Positions 22,674-59,511 of a stretch of DNA of 64,000 bases are shown here, piece after piece (within the stretch, counting starts at the first letter, position 1; each line of letters starts with the position of its first letter). The stretch lies in the sequence record PV611058.1; one strand, 5' to 3'. Made by a program: the position numbers and the translations under genes. Below the pieces are notes generated by a model, which ran no database searches, had not been told where the DNA came from, and was given only the letters and a program-made list of their open reading frames with translations.

Positions 22674-22730
22674 AATTACTCCATATAAAATAAAAAAGAC
22701 CTCTGTCTTGCTTTATGATATTTATCACAA

Positions 22731-23123
22731 TTAAGAAAAGGTCTGTTTGCTGATGCTAATATTTGTATCATTACCTGTTGTGATAAATTTTGTAATTCTT
22801 TTACCATTTAATTCTGTAGGTAAAACTAATGGTATTCCATTCAAACGCAAATCAACATCCATTGGTATTGCGAATTTGAAAGTACTAAGAGTACATTTAC
22901 CCCATGAAACTGGAAGATTATAGAAAGATGCGTTGTTATCTTTATATAGATCTATTTCAGTTTTTACTACACTTACCATCATGGGATAATCATGTACCAT
23001 AATAGCCTCCAACAACCTCGACAAATTCATAGCACCTGTGAACTTAGAATCGATGATTGTTGGAGTTGTACCATCACCTATATCTACAACAGTATTAATT
23101 GTGTAGAAAGTATATGGTTTCAT
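22731..23123 (-). CDS. Hypothetical protein
   Basis: 130 aa ORF with RBS. Confidence 0.65.
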   Translation of the reverse strand: MKPYTFYTINTVVDIGDGTTPTIIDSKFTGAMNLSRLLEAIMVHDYPMMVSVVKTEIDLYKDNNASFYNLPVSWGKCTLSTFKFAIPMDVDLRLNGIPLVLPTELNGKRITKFITTGNDTNISISKQTFS

Positions 23124-23287
23124 TCAATATCCTTATTTTTAGTCTCAACAACTTTATATCCAAAGAAATTTGTAGGAGGCATTCTTCGAAGTAATGGGTA
23201 ATTTAATCCAGTACTGACTGATGCTACTGCACCTGCTGATGTTGCACCAGCAGAAGCATTTTCTTTTAGTTTAGTTTTCTTCTTCAT
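23120..23287 (-). CDS. Mini-protein resembling the mature MCP N-terminal arm
   Basis: LKENASAGATSAGAVASVSTGLNYPLLRRMPPT vs MCP LNESATSGATTAGNIATLNKVILPIMRRVMPT. Confidence 0.6.
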   Translation of the reverse strand: MKKKTKLKENASAGATSAGAVASVSTGLNYPLLRRMPPTNFFGYKVVETKNKDIE

Positions 23288-23288
23288 A

Positions 23289-23561
23289 TCAATTCCCTTT
23301 ATTACGTTTTTCATCAAGTGCTATGTTCTCCAAGCCCTTCTGAAACTTTTTATAATCTCGGTTCTTAATACTAAGAAATAAACGTTTCTTCAAATCTTCA
23401 GCATCAGTTTGGTTAAATTCATCTTCGATACTCTCCAATAAATGAATAACAGAGTTGATTGCATGATCTGCACGATTACCAAAACTCTGTAATGTATCTT
23501 TCTCTGGTGTATAGTCAACTATACTATCAAGTAGATTCTTTTTATTGGATTTACTAGACAT
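23289..23561 (-). CDS. Hypothetical protein
   Basis: 90 aa ORF in operon. Confidence 0.65.
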   Translation of the reverse strand: MSSKSNKKNLLDSIVDYTPEKDTLQSFGNRADHAINSVIHLLESIEDEFNQTDAEDLKKRLFLSIKNRDYKKFQKGLENIALDEKRNKGN

Positions 23562-23564
23562 TCA

Positions 23565-25085
23565 TTATTTCCTTTGATTTAACCATTGCTTCATTGCATT
23601 TACACGATCAGTACCAATGTGAGGCTGTTGAGGCTGGGATTCAGTTTGTGTAGAAGTGATTGGATCACTATCTGTATTTAGTGTTACGCTTTCAACACTC
23701 GGTGTAGTGCTTGGTTTAGGAGCACCAGAAAGCGTATGACGCAGTGTTTGCATTGTACTTGGTGGCATTGCCATGTTACCACCGCCGACCTTAGAGATGC
23801 CACTGTGACGGAATCCTGACCCATCAGTTTCGAATTGTTGGATTGTGGTTGCGTGGTCTAGTACACGAAGTGAATCGATATCATATGACATACGCAAACG
23901 TGAACCAACTGCACTACTGTTACGTGTTTTCTGGAAGTCAAACCAAAGTTCGCCAGTTTCTTTACGTGCTTCAATGTAGATAACGTTATCCGCAGTATAG
24001 ATTTTAGAAATACCACCAGCAATCTGACTTTGACTTTTCTTATCTTCATCCATACCACTACGGTTAAACTGTGACGCAGTGAAGACGGTCAAATCCATTT
24101 TGGTTGCTAGTGCACGCAATTCTTCAGATACAAATTTATCTTTTGTAAATGTATTAGATTTATCATTAGGACCAAGACGATTTGATGTTAATAGGTCAAG
24201 GTAGTCCACACAAACATAATCTAATTTGACTTCCATTTTAATTTGCAATTCACGAAGATAACTTTCAATATCATCAGTGGTTGTTACGGATTCTGGTAAA
24301 CGTTTAATACGCAATATACCACTATCCTTGCCTTCCATTTGAACTCGTAGACCAATCTTTTCAGCTTCGTTCTTAACGTTACTTAGCTTAGATTCAGTCA
24401 TCATACCATAGATACGAACGGCTACCAACTCTTCTGCTAGTTCTAGTGAAATGTATGCACCATTCATACCAGCCTTAGCAAAGTTAACTGCTAAGTTCTG
24501 TAGTACTACTGATTTACCACCACCAGACGCGGCTGCAAAGATTTCAAGTTCACGGCGACCAAAACCACCGAATAGTTTATAGTCAAGGGTTTCCCATCCA
24601 CTCTTGAATGAACCTTGCATAGTGCTCAATGAACGAATGGTATCTTCTGGATTTTCAAAGATATCAAGACCCAACTCATTCTGTACAGATACTAACATAG
24701 CTTCACGAATGAGTTCTTCGATGCCACCATATTTTTTCTGATGTACTAATTCCATACCTTTCTCTACTGCTAGAGCTAGAGCTTTGTGACGGCAAAACTC
24801 ACTACAGGTATCCAGTACTGCCTGTTTATGAAGTTCTTGTACTTCATAATGATCATACTGATAACCACCTTTCACTTCGATATCTTTCAGTGTAGGGGAT
24901 GAACTATATTTTGCTGCATAATCATGAACGTACTGAATACTTTCATGAAATGTTTTATCAAAATATTCTGGCTTTAGAATATTTTTACAACGTACAAATA
25001 AATCTGGATTACTGAAAACTTGGGATAGTAAGTATTGTTGTGCATTAATCCCATACTGTTTGACGTCCACTGTGCTTTGAATCAT
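23565..25085 (-). CDS. gp41: Replicative DnaB-like helicase
   Basis: FAAASGGGKS, YISLELAEE, VCVDYLDLL, VSEELRALA, FTASQFNR. Confidence 0.93.
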   Translation of the reverse strand: MIQSTVDVKQYGINAQQYLLSQVFSNPDLFVRCKNILKPEYFDKTFHESIQYVHDYAAKYSSSPTLKDIEVKGGYQYDHYEVQELHKQAVLDTCSEFCRHKALALAVEKGMELVHQKKYGGIEELIREAMLVSVQNELGLDIFENPEDTIRSLSTMQGSFKSGWETLDYKLFGGFGRRELEIFAAASGGGKSVVLQNLAVNFAKAGMNGAYISLELAEELVAVRIYGMMTESKLSNVKNEAEKIGLRVQMEGKDSGILRIKRLPESVTTTDDIESYLRELQIKMEVKLDYVCVDYLDLLTSNRLGPNDKSNTFTKDKFVSEELRALATKMDLTVFTASQFNRSGMDEDKKSQSQIAGGISKIYTADNVIYIEARKETGELWFDFQKTRNSSAVGSRLRMSYDIDSLRVLDHATTIQQFETDGSGFRHSGISKVGGGNMAMPPSTMQTLRHTLSGAPKPSTTPSVESVTLNTDSDPITSTQTESQPQQPHIGTDRVNAMKQWLNQRK

Positions 25086-25111
25086 TTATGTTCCCTCATT
25101 TATATCCTGTG

Positions 25112-26167
25112 TTACATCCACTTATCCGTTTGTGCTTTAATATAGAAAGGCTCGTCAACTATACTATCATGTATCAGTTGTAAACAAAATAATCTTCCAA
25201 ATCTAGCACATGCTTCGTCAAAATCTTTAATGTGACGTATAGTACTTCCAACACGTACTGCCCCAAAATCTGGGAAAGAAACACTAAATCCATATTCTAG
25301 TGCTTGTTCAATTGTTTGTAACCCATCCTTATCACGGTCAGGTACGATAACAATCTTTTTACCTTTTTCTTGTGCAGCTTTAAGTACATCTATTTGTACT
25401 GCTGACAATTTAAAGTTATTTGCAGAAACACCACCCATTAGTGCTGCATCCATTGGACCTTCACAAACTAATATAGTTTTAATTCGTTCATCTTGTAACA
25501 GATCATAATTATATAGAATATTTGTACTGACCTGATTAATAAAACGATAGGTACTTCCTGGGTCTTTAAGTTTGTGTCTAGCAGTATATCCGATAATTTT
25601 ACCGTTCATAACGTATGGTATGATAAATCGGTCATACATTTTATGTTCTTTAGCTGGACTCCAATACAATTCTAAATCTAATAGATATGGATTTCGCTCA
25701 TTCACATGATTCAGAACACTAATAAATTCTTGTGGTATTTGCTCTTCTGGTAACGATGCCCATTCCCAGAATGTTTTTGAGTTCGGTGGTAATTCACGAA
25801 CAGTTACACGTTGATATAGTTTAGATGCAGTAGTTTCTTGTTCTGCAAAGTCTCCACTATCAACCATTTCTTTAATGTAAAATTTAGCTAGTTCTATTTC
25901 CTTATCCTGTGCACCAAAAGAAATGAGCAAAGACTCCATATCTTTGCTCATATATTTTCCAGGTTGCCACCCAGTTTTTAGACTACAGTTAAAACAGTTA
26001 TAAGAAACAGAACCATCTGCATTAAACATATGATTGCCGCGATTTTTAGTATCGGGGCGTGAATGACCACGGAACACACAAGCAGGACAATTGTGATGTG
26101 TCCACATACCAATTCCTGGTACTGGGTCATTCATGATTTGTGCCATGATGTTTTGTACAGCGTTCAT
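25112..26167 (-). CDS. gp61: DNA primase
   Basis: Zn finger CPAC...CFNC; RFIIP, GYTAR, TOPRIM VCEGPMDA, VPDRDKDG. Confidence 0.92.
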   Translation of the reverse strand: MNAVQNIMAQIMNDPVPGIGMWTHHNCPACVFRGHSRPDTKNRGNHMFNADGSVSYNCFNCSLKTGWQPGKYMSKDMESLLISFGAQDKEIELAKFYIKEMVDSGDFAEQETTASKLYQRVTVRELPPNSKTFWEWASLPEEQIPQEFISVLNHVNERNPYLLDLELYWSPAKEHKMYDRFIIPYVMNGKIIGYTARHKLKDPGSTYRFINQVSTNILYNYDLLQDERIKTILVCEGPMDAALMGGVSANNFKLSAVQIDVLKAAQEKGKKIVIVPDRDKDGLQTIEQALEYGFSVSFPDFGAVRVGSTIRHIKDFDEACARFGRLFCLQLIHDSIVDEPFYIKAQTDKWM

Positions 26168-36222: not shown

Positions 36223-41720
<5,498 letters not shown>

Positions 41721-41853
41721 TCACTTTCCCAGATTTGATAAATAATATCATAGAGATCAGGGAATATTGCCTTAAATTTAAATGTGGTTTATATTTTTTG
41801 ATAAATAATATTAAGCAGGGTGTTCCTGCACAAAATTTGACAAGGAGATTTTT

Positions 41854-51472: not shown

Positions 51473-51781
51473 CTATAGCAAGTCGTTTTCCATATCGTCA
51501 AGAACAGAATCAACGATGTTCGCTGCTATCTTCTTAGGCATCTTGAACCACTCGGTGTTAGGTTGCCTTACTGCGTTCATTTGTTTTAGTCTTTTGTGAA
51601 TTTCTTTCTCTGCTAAACGTGCATCTTCAAAGTGTACTTCATGGTATACCACAAAATCTCTAAAAGGTGTAGCAGTTTGATATGTCCTTAAACGTTCTGT
51701 CATTTCAGATTTACTGGTAAATCCTATCTTAACATAATCAGGCCATGCATCATTTACTATAACATAACATATCTGTGACAT
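51473..51781 (-). CDS. T5orf172/GIY-YIG-like domain protein
   Basis: YVIVNDAWPDYVKIGFT...RLRTYQTATP...EWF. Confidence 0.8.
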   Translation of the reverse strand: MSQICYVIVNDAWPDYVKIGFTSKSEMTERLRTYQTATPFRDFVVYHEVHFEDARLAEKEIHKRLKQMNAVRQPNTEWFKMPKKIAANIVDSVLDDMENDLL

Positions 51782-51820
51782 ATAAAATATCTCCATCAGT
51801 AATATGAAGATATTTATTAA

Positions 51821-52194: not shown

Positions 52195-53292
52195 TTACTT
52201 AAAAGTATTTACAATTTCTAAAACACTTTCAAGATACTTAGCATCAAAAGTTTCAGTAAATCCTGATGGCAACTCTTCAGTACTTACCACACCACTTTCA
52301 ATGTATTTCTTTATGAACTTTTCCAACAGTAATGGTTGATTGCCATCTTCAAAGTAGCGTTCTATAAGTACTTCATGCTCGAACTCAGAATTGCGGCTTT
52401 GTTCGTTGACACGGCGTTTCATATCACCAGTGATCCCATATTTGTACACCGTCTTGTTATTGTTAGTTAGTTTTTGTACATAGAAATATCCAGGTTTTGA
52501 TGGTTGGTATCCATATTCACCACATGATGGACATCCTTTACCAGCCATATGTGCTTTTGGTTGTTGGGAGAAAACACCATGCATCGGACATACAATATCA
52601 ACATAATTCTCGCTTATAGTATAATTAACCAAGCTATAATCATACTTATGGTTATGGATAGGAGACACCAGTTCAATGAAACGTTCCGTACTTCTTCCAC
52701 CTTTACCAGAGCATGTACCACAGCCAGTTTTACCGACGATTAGAGTTTTTGGATCTACCGTCCAGTCATGATGTCCTTTTGTGCAATGAACCGTTACTTT
52801 AGTTTTCTGATTGACATAAACAGTATTCGTCAAGTCCAATGCATCACCATAGTTTTCTTTTACTTTTGCAGTGAATGATTCAGTACTATATGCTTCATTT
52901 TTATTACATACGGGGCATCCTTTACCAGAAAGAAATTTATTTGGTGTGATTTCAAAGTAATTGTTGTGCTCTTTATCAGTGCAGAACAGTGTTACTTTTG
53001 TTATAGCGTTAGTGTAATTTAGTTTATCAAATTTGAATTTATCTTTTCCAAATTTAGTTTCTACAGTACTGATGAATGTGTCGTTGTTTGAACGTTGTGA
53101 CATGTTTGAATAACATGATGCACATGTACATGCAATGTGACGAAGTGCAGGTTTGGTGTTTTCTTTTCCACACTTGTTGCATTTCACTGTTGTCTTACTT
53201 GCCTTGAATACTAAAGTACTGAAGTCAAATTCTCCATACTTAGCAGTCATTTGGTTAATAAACTCTTCTTTGTTGATACTTACGTTTGGCAT
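52195..53292 (-). mobile_element. Putative free-standing homing endonuclease (repeated Cys/His Zn modules plus a GIY-YIG-like C-terminus)
   Basis: Four repeats F...Y....KV...C..H.....P...L.G.GCP.C; C-terminal YFYVQ...YKYGIT...RR; own sigma70 promoter. Confidence 0.7.
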
Positions 53293-53436: not shown

Positions 53437-54612
53437 TTACATGAAAGTAACGTTTTTGATAGCGATTTTGCTGTAGTAGTCAGCAGCGTTACCTAGTGAA
53501 CTGGTGCTATCGGTCAATTGAACATACCCGTATCTGGTTAAGAAAGTTGTAACGAGTTCCCCAGTGTTAGGGTCCATTACAGTACCGGAAGCCATTAGTG
53601 GGATGTATGGGCAATAGAACACACCAGCATCAGTTTCAGCATTACCTTTGTAACCAATCAAAATATCTTCTACGTCGCTGGCATACGTGTCTACAAAAAT
53701 ACGCATGGTGCTGTTTAGAGTACCAACAAATTTAACGTTAGTTGGAGCTTCGAAAGTACCTTCAGTAGTACGTGCAAAACTAGAAGTAGTTGCAGACTGT
53801 AGAATGGTTAGAGCGGTTGGAGAAACAACAGCCCAGTTCGCAGCACCACGTTTGGTACGACGAGCAACTTCGTTCGCTTGACGGTTGATTAGGGTAGCTA
53901 GAGCAGCGTGCTCGTCACCAACGAAGGTCGCAACACCAGTAACTTTAGATTGGTCATAAGTTACAGCAGCAGCACCAGGTAGTGCACGTAGACGGCTTAG
54001 TAGCTCTTGGTCGATTTCAACGGTAACTTCTTGAGCGATTGCAGCCATTAGTTCAGCTTCAACGTCGATACCATGTTGGGATTGTGCATCTTGTGCAGAT
54101 TCAACAGTCCAACGTGCAGATAGACGACGAGATTTCGCTTCAACAGTTTCACGTAGGATACGGATGTTAACGCGACGACCCATAGTACCTTCTAGTTGGC
54201 TAGTAGGAGCAGCTTGTGGGTTGCTGTTGTCTGCGTTTAGGTCACCAGTATAAGACTTAGCGATTTTGTATGGAGAAAGCATTTCTTCACCAGCGATAAC
54301 ACCAGGAGCGTTGTCAGCATATTGAACACGTAGGGTGTGGATCTGACCAACTGGGCCAGTCATTGGCTGAACACCGATGATTTCGTTAGCGATTACGGTT
54401 GGCATAACACGACGCATAATTGGTAGAATCACTTTGTTTAGAGTAGCGATGTTACCAGCGGTGGTTGCACCAGAAGTAGCAGATTCGTTTAGCATTAGTT
54501 TACGATGGTTATCAAGTACGGTTTCCATTACGGACTTACGAGTACCTTGTAGACCTTCAACTAGTTTCTCTTTAACTGCTACCCATTTGGATTCATTTAG
54601 TAGTTGTGACAT
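53437..54612 (-). CDS. gp23: Major capsid protein
   Basis: LPIMRRVMP, GVQPMTGPVGQI, VEAKSRRLSARWT, EIDQE, FYCPYIPL, TRYG. Confidence 0.97.
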   Translation of the reverse strand: MSQLLNESKWVAVKEKLVEGLQGTRKSVMETVLDNHRKLMLNESATSGATTAGNIATLNKVILPIMRRVMPTVIANEIIGVQPMTGPVGQIHTLRVQYADNAPGVIAGEEMLSPYKIAKSYTGDLNADNSNPQAAPTSQLEGTMGRRVNIRILRETVEAKSRRLSARWTVESAQDAQSQHGIDVEAELMAAIAQEVTVEIDQELLSRLRALPGAAAVTYDQSKVTGVATFVGDEHAALATLINRQANEVARRTKRGAANWAVVSPTALTILQSATTSSFARTTEGTFEAPTNVKFVGTLNSTMRIFVDTYASDVEDILIGYKGNAETDAGVFYCPYIPLMASGTVMDPNTGELVTTFLTRYGYVQLTDSTSSLGNAADYYSKIAIKNVTFM

Positions 54613-54702
54613 TATTATCTCCTTAAAGATGTTATATTCGTTTTTCAGTATGATATTATTTATAGAACTGAAAAATTTGATTATTAAAATGCTTTAAAAT
54701 GT

Positions 54703-55884: not shown

Positions 55885-56505
55885 TTAACCTTTTAATTTC
55901 TTGAAAAAATCGTAAATTTCAGAATCTACATTATTTACTGTTTTAGATTCTGTGATTTTTTTAGGACTATTACAAGGTGATCCGTACTTACTCATCAGAG
56001 ATTCAAAAACCGCAGTAGGGTATGCCTCTGGAGCACTAGGTTGAGCAACAATATCAATTGTGATAATTTCAAAATCAGAAACTATTCCATTGTAATCCAC
56101 GTTACCGGAACCACGAGAACTTACACCAAGTTTCACACCAGCTTCTAGCATTTTACGAATATTAGTACCATGAGCAGTATCAAGTAGTTTGATTTCTGCC
56201 ATGCCGTTAGCACCTTCCATCCAGACCTTAGTAATCATTGCTGCTACACGGTCAAGGTTAATTGTTAGTGTTTCTGGGTGGTCACATTCAACTAGAATAC
56301 TTTCACCTTTAGCCAAACGTTGAGCCATATTATTAACAGCTTTAGTAATTTCGGCTAAAGGGTAAATTCTCTCATTTAAATTTCTTTGATCGGCTTGAAT
56401 AGCAATACCACGAAGATAGCAATCACGCCCACCAAGTCCATTATCACGATGTTCCAAAACAACTTTAGAATCATTGAATGAAGACCATTCACGAATCATA
56501 CTCAT
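55885..56505 (-). CDS. gp21: Prohead core protease
   Basis: NLNERIYP, ECDHP, LGVSSRGSG, DIVAQPSAPEAYP. Confidence 0.95.
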   Translation of the reverse strand: MSMIREWSSFNDSKVVLEHRDNGLGGRDCYLRGIAIQADQRNLNERIYPLAEITKAVNNMAQRLAKGESILVECDHPETLTINLDRVAAMITKVWMEGANGMAEIKLLDTAHGTNIRKMLEAGVKLGVSSRGSGNVDYNGIVSDFEIITIDIVAQPSAPEAYPTAVFESLMSKYGSPCNSPKKITESKTVNNVDSEIYDFFKKLKG

Positions 56506-57370: not shown

Positions 57371-57470
57371 TATATCCTCCATAGATATATTACATTCATA
57401 TAAAGTATGATATTATTTAGTACTGAAAAATTTCGCCATTTTTAAAAGCTTTAAAAAGTGCGATTTTTGT

Positions 57471-57774: not shown

Positions 57775-59511
57775 TTAAAAAGAATCGCCTAAATTATTCG
57801 GGTTAAAACCTGCACTTCCTTGTTGTTCTTGGTATTCAGCATCGGCACTTTCTAAGTTACCGTCACCATCAATACCCAAATCCATACCAGGATCGTTAGG
57901 AGCATCTATACCAACAGATTGCAACCCAGCAGCATCTTCTTCACCACTTGACGGAGCGGAACCATCTTGTGGATTTTCTTGGAGCCACATTTGCTCATTC
58001 TTAACAATATCAGCTTTAGAGAAGCCCATTTTTTCAAGAATAGTTTGTTTTGCCATATATGGCAGATCGTTAAGTGGGAGATAGGTGTTAATTAGTTTAG
58101 CATCTAGTTCCGCTTTACGATAAGAAGCCAAGTTAATAGGTGGATTCATAATTACTTCAAAAGATGAAGTACTAATGTTATATCCATTTTTAACCATAAA
58201 ACGTTTAAATTCTGCATCAAATAGTTTTGCAACTAAACGTTGATAACGCATACATTGGTTATTAAAACGTAATTCACTTGCCATTGCTTGTGTTGCACCA
58301 TCACCGAATAGTGATACACCACCATCATCTGGACCTTGCGGTAGATATGAAGCTGGAATTTGCAATCCACGAATCAATTTATTGTTGAAGTAACGCAAGT
58401 CATCAATCTGACCTAAGTTATCACCACCTGGAAGTGTTTGTACATCTGAACCACGACCTTCAGAAGTTTGTGGGAAGAAGTAATCTTCTAGAATACTTAA
58501 TGGATTATATGCTGCATCCATTAGAGAAGTACTGCCACCTTTATTTGAAGGAATACGNNNNNNNNNNNNNNNNNNNNNNNNNNNNNNNNNNNNNNNNNNN
58601 NNNNNNNNNNNNNNNNNNNNNNNNNNNNNNNNNNNNNNNNNNNNNNNNNNNNNNNNNNNNNNNNNNNNNNNNNNNNNNNNNNNNNNNNNNNNNNNNNNNN
58701 NNNNNNNNNNNNCTTTGAAAACATCTTCAAGTATACTAGTACCAAAAGGCCAAACTCCATCTTGTCCTGTATTTAGGGTTAGATGAATTACGTGTTCTGC
58801 ACCAACTGGAATAACATCAAGACGACCGTTAGTACTGAATGGGTCAGCAGAGTTTCCTTGGTTAGTAAAGCCAGATGCACCACCTGCTGCTACTGAACCA
58901 CCGCCACCTAATGTGGTAGGGATTGCACCAGGATATGCAGTTTTGTCAAAACCAACTTGCAAGTTACTAAACACTTTATCTTTAAGATTCAAAGATACAT
59001 CACGGATATAATAAATTACAGGGGTTTTTCCGGTTGCTTCGTTAACGAATACTTGTTCAACGTTTTTTGGGCTTACCCAGTACCAGTCAAATGTTTCTGG
59101 GTCACGAATGAAGAATTGGTCACCGTATTTTAATAGGCCACGTACAATTTCATACATTCTGGTTTTAAAATCATTTTGTTCAGTCCATGCATCCAAACGG
59201 TCTTCAATAGTAGTTACTTCTGTATCACCAATATCATCTTTATATTTGATTTTATATGGAAGACCAAAATCTTCAGTACTTTGTGTACAGAAGTCAGCAA
59301 TGATATTAAGTGCTGTTCTAATTTCAGGATCTTGGTCCATCTGTTCATACTGACTATAACGTTCAGTACGGTTAGCTAAACCATTGTATACTACTGGAAG
59401 ATAGGAAGCGAAATTTGTTTTCGTTCCTGTTGATTTGTTGCTATTACTGGACTGATTAGGGACGACCGATAACTTCGATCTCCCCATTGTCATATGTCGT
59501 TTCCAACTCAT
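57775..59511 (-). CDS. gp20: Portal protein (spans assembly gap)
   Basis: YEQMDQDPEI, LEDYFFP...GRGSDVQTLPGG.NLG.IDD..YF..KL...L.IP.S. Confidence 0.93.
   Translation of the reverse strand: MSWKRHMTMGRSKLSVVPNQSSNSNKSTGTKTNFASYLPVVYNGLANRTERYSQYEQMDQDPEIRTALNIIADFCTQSTEDFGLPYKIKYKDDIGDTEVTTIEDRLDAWTEQNDFKTRMYEIVRGLLKYGDQFFIRDPETFDWYWVSPKNVEQVFVNEATGKTPVIYYIRDVSLNLKDKVFSNLQVGFDKTAYPGAIPTTLGGGGSVAAGGASGFTNQGNSADPFSTNGRLDVIPVGAEHVIHLTLNTGQDGVWPFGTSILEDVFKXXXXXXXXXXXXXXXXXXXXXXXXXXXXXXXXXXXXXXXXXXXXXXXXXXXXRIPSNKGGSTSLMDAAYNPLSILEDYFFPQTSEGRGSDVQTLPGGDNLGQIDDLRYFNNKLIRGLQIPASYLPQGPDDGGVSLFGDGATQAMASELRFNNQCMRYQRLVAKLFDAEFKRFMVKNGYNISTSSFEVIMNPPINLASYRKAELDAKLINTYLPLNDLPYMAKQTILEKMGFSKADIVKNEQMWLQENPQDGSAPSSGEEDAAGLQSVGIDAPNDPGMDLGIDGDGNLESADAEYQEQQGSAGFNPNNLGDSF
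58558..58712. other. Assembly gap (155 N)
   Basis: Run of N within the portal gene. Confidence 0.99.

What the first reader, a model, noticed from the sequence alone, without database searches (positions are those of the whole stretch)
23120..23287. 55-aa mini-protein that copies the processed N-terminal arm of the major capsid protein
LKE-NASAGATSAGAVASVSTGLNYPLLRRMPPT aligns nearly residue by residue with MCP LNE-SATSGATTAGNIATLNKVILPIMRRVMPT, including the candidate gp21 cleavage site. It lies about 30 kb from the MCP gene. It could occupy N-arm binding grooves at vertices or the portal, act as an assembly modulator or size determinant, or be a decoy for capsid-sensing defences such as CapRel-type systems.
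Basis: partly seen in the sequence, partly recalled or inferred. Interest (0 to 1): 0.65.

Follow-up and report, generated by a model that had tools for sequence, protein, structure and literature searches.

The report
Mini-protein copying the capsid protein's N-terminus
A conserved 55-residue gene of this jumbo coliphage really does copy the cleavage site and first ~30 residues of the mature major capsid protein. Similar copies sit beside the primase/helicase genes of T6 (gene 61.1), an Aeromonas phage and a cyanophage, so this looks like an overlooked head-assembly accessory gene of T4-type phages whose role is still untested.

Summary
Window 23120-23287 (minus strand) encodes a 55-aa protein. 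Its residues 2-39 match residues 36-72 of the Gp23-type major capsid protein (MCP, 53437-54612): BLASTP E 3e-7, shuffle z 10.7, profile-profile probability 95% with E 3e-8.

The ORF is a real gene. It has orthologues in the same gene order in at least four genera and in metagenomic contigs. Pairwise dN/dS is 0.07-0.56, mostly 0.36 or lower. It is translationally coupled to both neighbours.

The conserved plan is a short leader ending in hydrophobic-x-Glu (a T4 gp21-type cleavage motif), then a copy of the MCP's mature N-terminus, then a basic, often Lys-rich tail.

The same plan recurs beside the primase/helicase genes in three distant lineages, and each copy matches its own MCP:
- T6 gene 61.1, whose leader matches that of internal-protein gene Ip6.
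- Aeromonas phage phiAS5 ORF0140.
- Cyanophage Syn9 gp190.

Best reading (confidence about 0.45): a prohead-targeted substrate of the prohead protease that uses the contacts of the MCP N-terminus and leaves a basic peptide in or on the head. This is inferred, not shown. Rival readings are an assembly or protease regulator and a host-directed decoy. Novelty: a new variant of a known kind.

The parts
23120..23287 (-). The 55-aa mini-protein gene. Residues 1-9 are a Lys-rich leader ending L-K-E. Residues 10-39 copy the MCP's mature N-terminus. Residues 40-55 hold an aromatic FFGYK motif and a basic tail.
   Evidence: PHROG phrog_17311, function unknown.
23261..23269 (-). Codons 7-9 (L-K-E). This is the invariant hydrophobic-x-Glu motif, aligned with L-N-E at residues 41-43 of the MCP, and is the candidate prohead-protease cleavage site.
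   Evidence: E9 is invariant and position 7 is always L/I/V/F in 26 orthologues. The same holds in more divergent copies. Cleavage itself was not shown.
54394..54507 (-). MCP codons 36-73, the segment that the mini-protein copies: the end of the propeptide, the L-N-E motif and the mature N-terminus. It corresponds to the N-fist/N-arm region of T4 gp23.
   Evidence: MCP 49-72 aligns with T4 gp23 residues 82-105.
53437..54612 (-). Major capsid protein gene (Gp23 family), preceded by a T4-type late promoter motif at 54648-54665.
55885..56505 (-). Prohead protease (Peptidase_S77, the T4 gp21 family), the presumed processing enzyme.
   Evidence: E 8e-21.
23289..23561 (-). Upstream 90-aa gene. Its stop codon lies 1 nt before the mini-protein's ATG. 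Its orthologues were found in GAP32 and CBB virions.
22731..23123 (-). Downstream 130-aa gene. Its ATG overlaps the mini-protein's stop codon (ATGA). Its orthologue was found in CBB virions with 4 peptides. Its homologue also follows the mini-like ORF in phage Phosso.
23565..26167 (-). gp41-type helicase (23565-25085) and primase (25112-26167). This is the conserved neighbourhood of the mini-protein in all lineages. A sigma-70-like promoter with an extended -10 lies at 26226-26197.

Best explanation
The gene encodes a small head-assembly accessory protein that is a partial paralogue of the major capsid protein.

Proposed mechanism:
1. The part copied from the MCP (the maturation site plus the first ~30 mature residues) lets the protein make the contacts that the MCP's N-terminal segment makes. 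In T4 that segment lies inside the prohead and probably contacts the scaffolding core. After cleavage and expansion it moves out and docks on neighbouring capsomers.
2. The protein is therefore taken into, or onto, the assembling prohead.
3. The Peptidase_S77 prohead protease cuts it after Glu9.
4. A basic peptide of about 46 residues remains, with an N-terminus that looks like that of the mature MCP. It could fill N-terminus sockets that no MCP subunit supplies (around the non-MCP pentons or the portal). It could instead stay inside the head, with its basic tail near the DNA or acidic core proteins.

Shown here: homology to the MCP segment, conservation, purifying selection, gene order, the invariant cleavage-type motif, and recurrence of the same plan in distant T4-type phages.

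Inferred: targeting to the prohead, cleavage, the binding partner and the final location.
For: 1. Robust homology to MCP 36-73. Reciprocal whole-genome searches find only the mini-protein and the MCP.
2. It is a real gene. Orthologues occur in Asteriusvirus, Mimasvirus, Eneladusvirus, Alcyoneusvirus, Munch-like phages and metagenomic contigs, always after the helicase and the 90-aa gene and before the 130-aa gene. Pairwise dN/dS is 0.07-0.56, mostly 0.36 or lower.
3. Hydrophobic-x-Glu is invariant in front of the copied segment in every copy and in every MCP. The phage encodes a gp21-family protease.
4. T6 gene 61.1 has the same plan and neighbourhood. Its first ten codons, M-K-T-Y-x-E-F-I-x-E, occur only twice in T6, the other time in internal-protein gene Ip6. 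Such leaders target T4 internal proteins into the prohead core and are removed by gp21 (PMC9026906).
5. phiAS5 ORF0140 and Syn9 gp190 repeat the plan beside the primase, and each matches its own MCP. Syn9 gp190 is annotated as a head protein.
6. In T4 the homologous gp23 segment lies inside the prohead and probably contacts the scaffolding core, then docks between capsomers after expansion. It also carries the head-size mutations A66D, A94V and G97S (PMC9546572; PMC9958956).
7. In the close relative phAPEC6 the pentons are not MCP, and both the penton protein and an abundant surface protein remain unassigned (PMC7247149).
8. The neighbouring gene products were found in GAP32 and CBB virions.
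9. Contigs from RNA libraries span the ORF.
Against: - The protein was not reported in the virion proteomes of phAPEC6 or CBB, and it is not marked as structural in GAP32.
- These absences are weak evidence. In RaK2 the ORF is unannotated, so it was missing from that study's in-house search database, and that search accepted only fully tryptic peptides.
- No late-promoter motif lies near the gene. The nearest promoter-like site is a sigma-70-type site upstream of the primase, which suggests earlier expression than the MCP.
- The leader here (MKKKTKLKE) does not resemble the T6 targeting leader.
- Cleavage and binding are untested.
- The RNA evidence consists of contigs and cannot exclude DNA carry-over.
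Confidence: 0.45

Rival explanations
1. A regulator of head assembly that acts in the cytoplasm or transiently in the prohead and is not a virion component. As a free copy of the MCP's scaffold-contacting, protease-cut segment, it would compete with the MCP for the scaffolding core or for the protease. That could set the timing of cleavage, or the capsomer angles and hence the head size (T=28).
For: - The homologous T4 gp23 segment carries head-size mutations and probably contacts the scaffolding core.
- The protein is absent from three virion proteomes.
- The operon has a sigma-70-like promoter and no late motif, so the protein could be present before the MCP.
- Each copy tracks its own MCP, as expected for a competitor.
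Against: - A pure competitor does not need the conserved basic tail, nor the internal-protein-type targeting leader of T6 gene 61.1.
- Syn9 gp190 is annotated as a head protein.
- No direct test was possible.
Confidence: 0.2
2. A host-directed decoy or antagonist. The copied segment would bind a host factor that recognises the MCP N-terminal region and so blunt an abortive-infection response. The model is the binding of the T4 Gol segment of gp23 to EF-Tu, which activates the Lit protease.
For: - The Gol region is described as the most conserved part of gp23 and binds EF-Tu (PMC3014915).
- The mini-protein keeps the P-L-L-R-R-M-P-P-T stretch, which aligns with the start of that most-conserved stretch of gp23. 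Gol's exact residue range is from memory only and was not checked.
- Possible early or middle expression.
- Absence from virion proteomes.
Against: - The part conserved across all lineages is the cleavage motif plus the first ~15 mature residues. The R-R-x-x-P-T stretch is lost in the Phosso, Atu_ph07, T6, phiAS5 and Syn9 copies.
- An invariant protease-type motif and a capsid-targeting leader are unexplained by a decoy role.
- Hosts as different as cyanobacteria, Aeromonas and rhizobia would all need the same kind of sensor.
Confidence: 0.1
3. An evolutionary relic, or merely a spacer ORF that couples translation of the flanking genes, with no function of its own. In this reading the resemblance to the MCP comes from low-complexity Ala/Ser/Gly/Thr composition.
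For: - The shared segment is rich in A, S, G and T. A chance low-complexity hit of the profile to an autotransporter-like protein was seen.
- The ORF overlaps or abuts both neighbours.
Against: - Composition-corrected statistics remain strong, and shuffles that keep composition never reach the observed score.
- dN/dS is well below 1.
- Length, motif and gene order are conserved across genera.
- Independent recurrence in T6, phiAS5 and Syn9, each matching its own MCP at E 1e-8 to 2e-10.
Confidence: 0.04

Closest known systems
T4/T6 gene 61.1 (hypothetical protein gp61.1)
   Same: - A small ORF (62 aa) in the helicase 41 / primase 61 cluster.
- A leader ending in hydrophobic-x-Glu, then a copy of its own MCP's mature N-terminus (gp61.1 2-38 against gp23 57-93, E 1e-8), then a poly-Lys tail.
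   Different: - Direct sequence similarity to the window's protein is negligible (hhalign probability 9.7%). Each resembles its own MCP.
- The T6 leader is an internal-protein-type targeting sequence; the window's leader is Lys-rich.
- In T6 the gene lies between 41 and 61; here it lies after 61 and 41.
- I found no published function for 61.1.
T4 internal proteins (IPI-III, Ip5/Ip6) and core peptides from gp67/gp68
   Same: - Small, often basic proteins with a short N-terminal leader ending in x-x-Glu.
- The leader targets them to the prohead core and gp21 removes it (PMC9026906).
- The leader of T6 gene 61.1 matches that of Ip6.
   Different: - Their mature parts do not resemble the MCP N-terminus.
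- They are encoded in the IP locus or the head gene cluster, not beside the primase and helicase.
- Targeting and cleavage of the window's protein are untested.
T4 gp24 vertex protein (full-length paralogue of gp23)
   Same: A paralogue of the MCP with a very short propeptide. (The figure of 10 residues is from memory; the T4 paper read numbers mature gp24* from residue 11.) After expansion its N-terminal region reaches onto neighbouring capsomers.
   Different: - gp24 has the whole HK97-type fold and forms pentons. The mini-protein has only the N-terminal segment.
- No gp24 homologue is known in this phage group (PMC7247149).
Satellite size-redirecting scaffold mimics (SaPI1 CpmB, P4 Sid); comparison from general knowledge
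   Same: A small protein that copies one side of the scaffold-capsid interface could compete for it and change assembly.
   Different: - Those proteins mimic or replace the scaffold side and are encoded by parasites of the phage.
- This protein copies the capsid-protein side and is encoded by the phage itself.
- No size effect has been shown.
T4 Gol peptide of gp23 (Lit / EF-Tu exclusion)
   Same: A short segment in the first quarter of the MCP with a biological activity of its own. It partly overlaps the copied region.
   Different: - Gol is part of gp23, not a separate gene.
- The Gol-like stretch is not conserved in most of the mini-protein's counterparts.

Membership tests
PHROG phrog_17311 (unknown function) | Significant match to the family profile over its full length | tested here: met
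   E 6.5e-32, residues 1-53 on profile positions 1-52 of 54.
Gp23-type major capsid protein family (PF07068) | Match to the family model; possession of the HK97-type body | tested here: not met
   No Pfam hit for the 55-aa protein. It aligns only with MCP residues 36-73. It is a partial paralogue, not a member.
Substrates of the T4 gp21-type prohead protease | A hydrophobic-x-Glu site, in a phage that encodes a Peptidase_S77 protease | tested here: met
   L-K-E at residues 7-9. E9 is invariant and position 7 is L/I/V/F in 26 orthologues. Protease at 55885-56505.
Substrates of the T4 gp21-type prohead protease | Cleavage demonstrated at that site in proheads | not testable with these tools
   Needs N-terminal sequencing or semi-tryptic mass spectrometry. 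Published proteomes did not report the protein.
T4-type internal proteins with a capsid targeting sequence | An N-terminal leader of the M-K-T-Y-x-E-F-I-x-E type that directs the protein into the core | tested here: not met
   The window's leader is MKKKTKLKE. The motif is met by the T6 counterpart, gene 61.1.
T4-type internal proteins with a capsid targeting sequence | Presence in the mature head | tested here: inconclusive
   Not listed in the phAPEC6 or CBB proteomes and not marked as structural in GAP32. The RaK2 in-house database lacked the ORF, and that search took fully tryptic peptides only.
Proposed class: MCP-N-terminus copies beside primase/helicase (window mini-protein, T6 61.1, phiAS5 ORF0140, Syn9 gp190) | Significant similarity to the cognate MCP's segment around the maturation site | tested here: met
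   E 3e-7, 1e-8, 2e-8, 2e-10.
Proposed class: MCP-N-terminus copies beside primase/helicase | Location within a few genes of the gp41 helicase and/or gp61 primase | tested here: met
   The Phosso and Atu_ph07 copies keep the link to the 130-aa gene's homologue instead.
Proposed class: MCP-N-terminus copies beside primase/helicase | A basic, Lys-rich stretch after the copied segment | tested here: met
   The window's own tail (TKNKDIE) is the least basic; most orthologues end in K-rich runs.
Proposed class: MCP-N-terminus copies beside primase/helicase | Common descent of the four copies, as opposed to repeated partial duplication of the MCP gene | tested here: inconclusive
   T6 61.1 against phiAS5 ORF0140 gives E 1e-10, but T6 61.1 against the window's family gives probability 9.7%.

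The most novel reading that the evidence does not exclude
T4-type phages, from T-even phages and cyanophages to Rak2-like jumbo phages, share an unrecognised accessory head gene (61.1 in T4/T6). Its product mimics the mature N-terminus of the phage's own capsid protein and co-evolves with it. After cleavage by the prohead protease it would plug N-terminus sockets that the MCP lattice leaves empty (next to pentons or the portal), or tether DNA to the shell through its Lys-rich tail. It would be a trans-acting 'spare N-terminus' that contributes to head size or stability.
Probability: 0.2. Interest if true: 0.8.

Novelty: new variant of a known kind. Interest (0 to 1): 0.62.

Why it matters
- A free-standing, co-evolving copy of a capsid protein's maturation site and N-terminus has, as far as I could find, not been described.
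- If it is a head component or assembly modulator, it would add a conserved player to the T4 head pathway, the best-studied model of large-capsid assembly. It would also give T4 gene 61.1 a testable function.
- It could help explain how Rak2-like phages build T=28 heads whose penton and surface proteins are still unassigned.
- The tests are simple and can be run in T4/T6 as well as in the jumbo phages.
- For annotation, it shows that short ORFs resembling their own MCP are easily missed. The gene is unannotated in RaK2, and its Syn9 counterpart is labelled 'major head protein'.

Tried and rejected
No binding test exists, and none is claimed.
- The AlphaFold2 model of the MCP from a shallow alignment was unusable (pLDDT 41.6).
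- The downstream 130-aa protein folded with high confidence (pLDDT 93.6). It is a generic ferredoxin-like alpha+beta fold with no informative match (ESM Atlas leads at 0.90 or below), so it gave no clue to head or tail location.
- The sigma-70 promoter and terminator scan was close to chance (41 sites found, 33.5 expected).
- No parallel substitutions between the mini-protein and the MCP are evident within the Rak2-like group (sequences listed), so there is no sign of gene conversion.
- Weak profile hits to the photosystem protein PsaE (E 0.03-0.8) and to an autotransporter-like protein of phage Munch were judged chance or low-complexity matches.
- PA5oct gp281 has no homologue in the genomes searched apart from the shared motif.
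- The large representative-protein search was not run. The profile is too short and too low in complexity to give significant hits in 1.8 billion proteins, and no claim here rests on absence there.
- The RNA-library data are contigs only and cannot show strand, ends or level.

Full report
**What the window is.** The 64-kb window is 100% identical over the 2.4-kb stretch compared (22700-25100) to Escherichia phage WPEC3, and 99% or more to other roughly 350-386-kb coliphages of the genus Asteriusvirus, the Rak2-like jumbo myoviruses. The window contains the T4-type head gene cluster:
- portal, 57775-59511;
- Peptidase_S77 prohead protease, 55885-56505;
- a 371-aa scaffold candidate;
- a Gp23-family major capsid protein (MCP), 53437-54612.

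Two runs of N (39436-39771 and 58558-58712) were left untouched.

**Check of the observation.** The ORF lies at 23120-23287 on the minus strand and encodes 55 residues.
- BLASTP against the MCP gives E 3e-7, with 15/38 identities, mini-protein 2-39 against MCP 36-72.
- The Smith-Waterman score is 73, against 27.8 +/- 4.2 for 5000 composition-preserving shuffles. Among 184 small ORFs of the window only a fragment of the MCP itself scores higher.
- A profile of 26 orthologues compared with a profile of 10 MCPs gives hhalign probability 95.1% and E 3e-8 over 34 columns.
- The mini family profile finds the MCP N-terminus in each of ten related genomes. It is the only other clear hit in eight of them. 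The reverse search in WPEC3 finds only the mini-protein and the MCP.
- Third-position identity in the aligned codons is at the random level (11/36). The duplication is therefore old.

**It is a real gene.**
- Orthologues of 50-55 residues occur in Asteriusvirus, Mimasvirus (GAP32, CBB), Eneladusvirus (fHe-Yen9-04, BF and Erwinia phages), Munch-like Salmonella phages, Alcyoneusvirus RaK2 (where the ORF is unannotated) and many metagenomic contigs.
- The gene order is always primase, gp41-type helicase, a ~90-aa gene, the mini-protein gene, a ~130-aa gene. RaK2 has one extra ORF between the 90-aa gene and the mini-protein gene.
- Pairwise dN/dS is 0.07-0.56, and 0.36 or lower in all but one pair.
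- The start codon lies 1 nt after the upstream stop codon, and the stop codon overlaps the next ATG.
- Contigs from three RNA libraries span the ORF, one as a 930-nt piece covering 22778-23707. Contigs cannot exclude DNA carry-over.

**Anatomy.** Conserved features, in order:
1. A short Lys-rich leader.
2. An invariant hydrophobic-x-Glu (L-K-E here), aligned with L-N-E at residues 41-43 of the MCP.
3. An Ala/Ser/Gly/Thr-rich stretch, N-A-S-A-G-A-T-S-A-G-A-V-A-S-V, matching the MCP's S-A-T-S-G-A-T-T-A-G-N-I-A-T-L.
4. P-L-L-R-R-M-P-P-T, matching P-I-M-R-R-V-M-P-T.
5. An aromatic F-F-G-Y-K motif.
6. A variable basic tail.

The MCP segment aligns with T4 gp23 residues 82-105. In T4 this N-terminal region forms the 'N-fist' and the N-arm. 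According to the T4 structural papers:
- In the prohead the region is disordered and inside the shell, where it probably contacts the scaffolding core.
- After cleavage at Glu65 and expansion it moves out and docks on subunits of its own and the neighbouring capsomer.
- It carries the head-length mutations A66D, A94V and G97S (PMC9546572; PMC9958956).

**Wider distribution of the module.** In more distant jumbo phages with the same MCP type the module appears in other settings.
- Phage Phosso has a free-standing 65-aa ORF directly upstream of the homologue of the 130-aa gene. Its hhalign match to the mini family is probability 88.8% and E 2.5e-6, and BLASTP to its own MCP gives E 0.001.
- In Atu_ph07 the module forms the last ~50 residues of a 778-aa protein with a Zeta_toxin/AAA kinase domain. 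It is again preceded by I-T-E and ends in a Lys-rich run.
- In PA5oct an MS-confirmed acidic 498-aa virion protein carries V-E-E followed by T-A-S-A-G-A-S-S-A-G-G-I-A-S-V-A at residues 40-58.
- The element common to all of these is the cleavage-type motif plus the first ~15 residues after it. The R-R-x-x-P-T part is not shared.

**Control in other T4-type phages.** This was meant as a negative control. I searched three other T4-type genomes with the N-terminal segment of their own MCPs, and each gave one clear second hit close to the primase gene. phiAS5 also gave a weaker third hit that I did not examine.
- **T6.** The hit is gene 61.1 (62 aa), between 61.2 and primase 61 in the 41-61 cluster.
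  - BLASTP to gp23 gives E 1e-8, gp61.1 2-38 against gp23 57-93. The reverse search finds only gp23.
  - Its sequence is a leader M-K-T-Y-K-E-F-I-K-E, then a copy of the gp23 N-terminal segment, then a poly-Lys tail.
  - The leader pattern M-K-T-Y-x-E-F-I-x-E occurs only twice in T6, the other time at the start of internal-protein gene Ip6.
  - Such leaders are the capsid targeting sequences that bring T4 internal proteins into the prohead core and are then removed by gp21 (PMC9026906).
- **Aeromonas phage phiAS5.** The hit is the C-terminus of ORF0140, which lies between helicase and primase: L-I-E, then a copy of MCP 76-105 (E 2e-8), then K-K-K-V-E-K-K. It is homologous to T6 gp61.1 (E 1e-10).
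- **Cyanophage Syn9.** The hit is the N-terminus of gp190, two genes upstream of the primase: 63% identical to MCP 49-75 (E 2e-10), followed by K-I-K-K-K-D-A-K-K. The gene is annotated 'major head protein'.
- **Each copy matches its own MCP.** T6 gp61.1 scarcely matches the window's family (probability 9.7%). Either selection keeps each copy similar to its cognate MCP N-terminus, or the copy has been re-created several times. Both point to functional mimicry of that segment towards a partner that co-evolves with it.

**Mechanism.** I commit to a head-assembly accessory role. The protein would use the MCP-like segment to enter or attach to the prohead, be cut after Glu9 by the prohead protease, and leave a basic ~46-residue peptide with an MCP-like N-terminus.

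Two placements fit the data.
- It may fill N-terminus sockets that the lattice leaves empty. The 10-Å map of phAPEC6 shows T=28 with pentons that are not MCP, and an unassigned surface protein (PMC7247149).
- It may be an internal peptide whose basic tail lies near the DNA or acidic core proteins.

Shown: homology, conservation, gene order, the motif and the recurrence. Inferred: targeting, cleavage, partner and location.

Points against:
- The virion proteomes of phAPEC6 and CBB do not list the protein, and GAP32 does not mark it as structural. The RaK2 study could not have found it, because the ORF is unannotated and only fully tryptic peptides were searched.
- The late promoter motif found upstream of the MCP and other structural genes is absent near this operon. 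The operon follows a sigma-70-like promoter upstream of the primase.

**Rivals.**
- A non-virion regulator that competes with the MCP for the scaffold or the protease and so affects timing or head size. This fits the missing proteome evidence and the promoter picture, but it does not explain the basic tail or the targeting leader in T6.
- A host-directed decoy modelled on Gol/EF-Tu/Lit (PMC3014915). This is weakened because the Gol-like stretch is not conserved in the other copies.
- A relic, or a chance similarity. This is rejected by the statistics, the purifying selection and the recurrence.

**Comparison with what is known.** The protein works most like the T4 internal proteins and core peptides, which have a short leader, are cleaved by gp21 and are often basic. 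It is not a member of those families: the targeting leader is not met here, and presence in the virion is unresolved. It is a partial paralogue of the MCP, as gp24 is a full one. I found no paper describing such a free-standing MCP N-terminus copy, or a function for T4 gene 61.1. This is a limited search, not proof of absence.

**Verdict.**
- Novelty: a new variant of a known kind.
- Interest is moderate to high, mainly because the feature extends to T4-type phages in general and can be tested directly in T4.

**Limits.** There is no binding or structural test of the peptide. The MCP model was poor. The expression evidence comes from contigs only. The residue range of Gol, the exact T4 internal-protein leader sequence and the length of the gp24 propeptide are partly from memory and are marked as such.

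Noticed in passing
T6 record MH550421.1 17434-17622 (locus L049:1935-2123, minus strand): T6 gene 61.1 (hypothetical, 62 aa) combines an internal-protein-type capsid-targeting leader (the same 10-residue pattern as Ip6), a copy of gp23 residues 57-93 and a poly-Lys tail. This suggests it is a prohead-targeted, gp21-processed protein.
   Followed up: partly
RaK2 record JQ513383.1 120706-120858 (locus L017): The RaK2 orthologue of the mini-protein (51 aa) is not annotated in the GenBank record, so it was missing from the in-house protein database used for the RaK2 virion proteome.
   Followed up: yes
PA5oct record NC_071039.1 127321-128817 (locus L018:1393-2889): The MS-confirmed acidic virion protein gp281 carries the motif V-E-E / T-A-S-A-G-A-S-S-A-G-G-I-A-S-V-A at residues 40-58. 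This is the same cleavage-site-plus-N-terminus module as in the MCP, placed ahead of a 440-residue acidic body.
   Followed up: partly
Atu_ph07 record NC_042013.1 39484-41820 (locus L047:3985-6321, minus strand): A 778-aa protein with a Zeta_toxin/AAA kinase domain ends in the mini-protein-like module (I-T-E, an MCP-like stretch, a Lys-rich end). It may be a cargo enzyme tagged for the head, or a precursor of a released peptide.
   Followed up: partly
window 54592-54603 and 54484-54495 (MCP codons 4-7 and 40-43): The MCP has the motif L-x-E-S twice: L-L-N-E-S at residues 4-8 and M-L-N-E-S at 40-44. L5, E7 and E43 are invariant in the family, so there may be two protease sites in the propeptide.
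   Followed up: no
window 54648-54665, 57405-57422, 37634-37651 (minus strand) and 41736-41753 (plus strand): An extended T4-like late promoter motif (consensus near CTATAAATAATATCATAC) precedes the MCP gene and three other structural genes or gene groups. Four matches were found against 0.22 expected.
   Followed up: partly
window 37646-39290: The large terminase is annotated in two pieces (A and B) in the relative vB_Ec-M-J. The adjoining ORF 39262-40125 contains a masked run of N (39436-39771), which was left untouched.
   Followed up: no
window 52195-53292 and 51473-51796: Endonuclease-like genes lie directly downstream of the MCP gene. The first has treble-clef zinc-finger and T5orf172-type hits, and the second is annotated as a homing endonuclease in relatives. 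T6 has segD in the same position.
   Followed up: no
window 23120-23287, residues 18-45: There is a weak, non-significant profile resemblance to a stretch of photosystem I subunit PsaE (E 0.03-0.8). It is probably chance, but might hint that V-A-S-V / G-L-N-Y-P-L-L forms a hairpin (PsaE's structure in this stretch is from memory).
   Followed up: partly
Syn9 record NC_008296.2 154429-154953: gp190 is labelled 'major head protein' although it is a 174-aa protein that shares only 27 residues with the true MCP (gp133). The label is probably an annotation carry-over from that short match.
   Followed up: partly
phiAS5 record HM452126.1 192460-192522 (minus strand, locus L061): A third, weaker match to the phiAS5 MCP N-terminal segment (E 3.5e-4, 62% identity over 21 residues, within a 142-aa open frame). 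It could be a further copy of the module or a chance hit.
   Followed up: no
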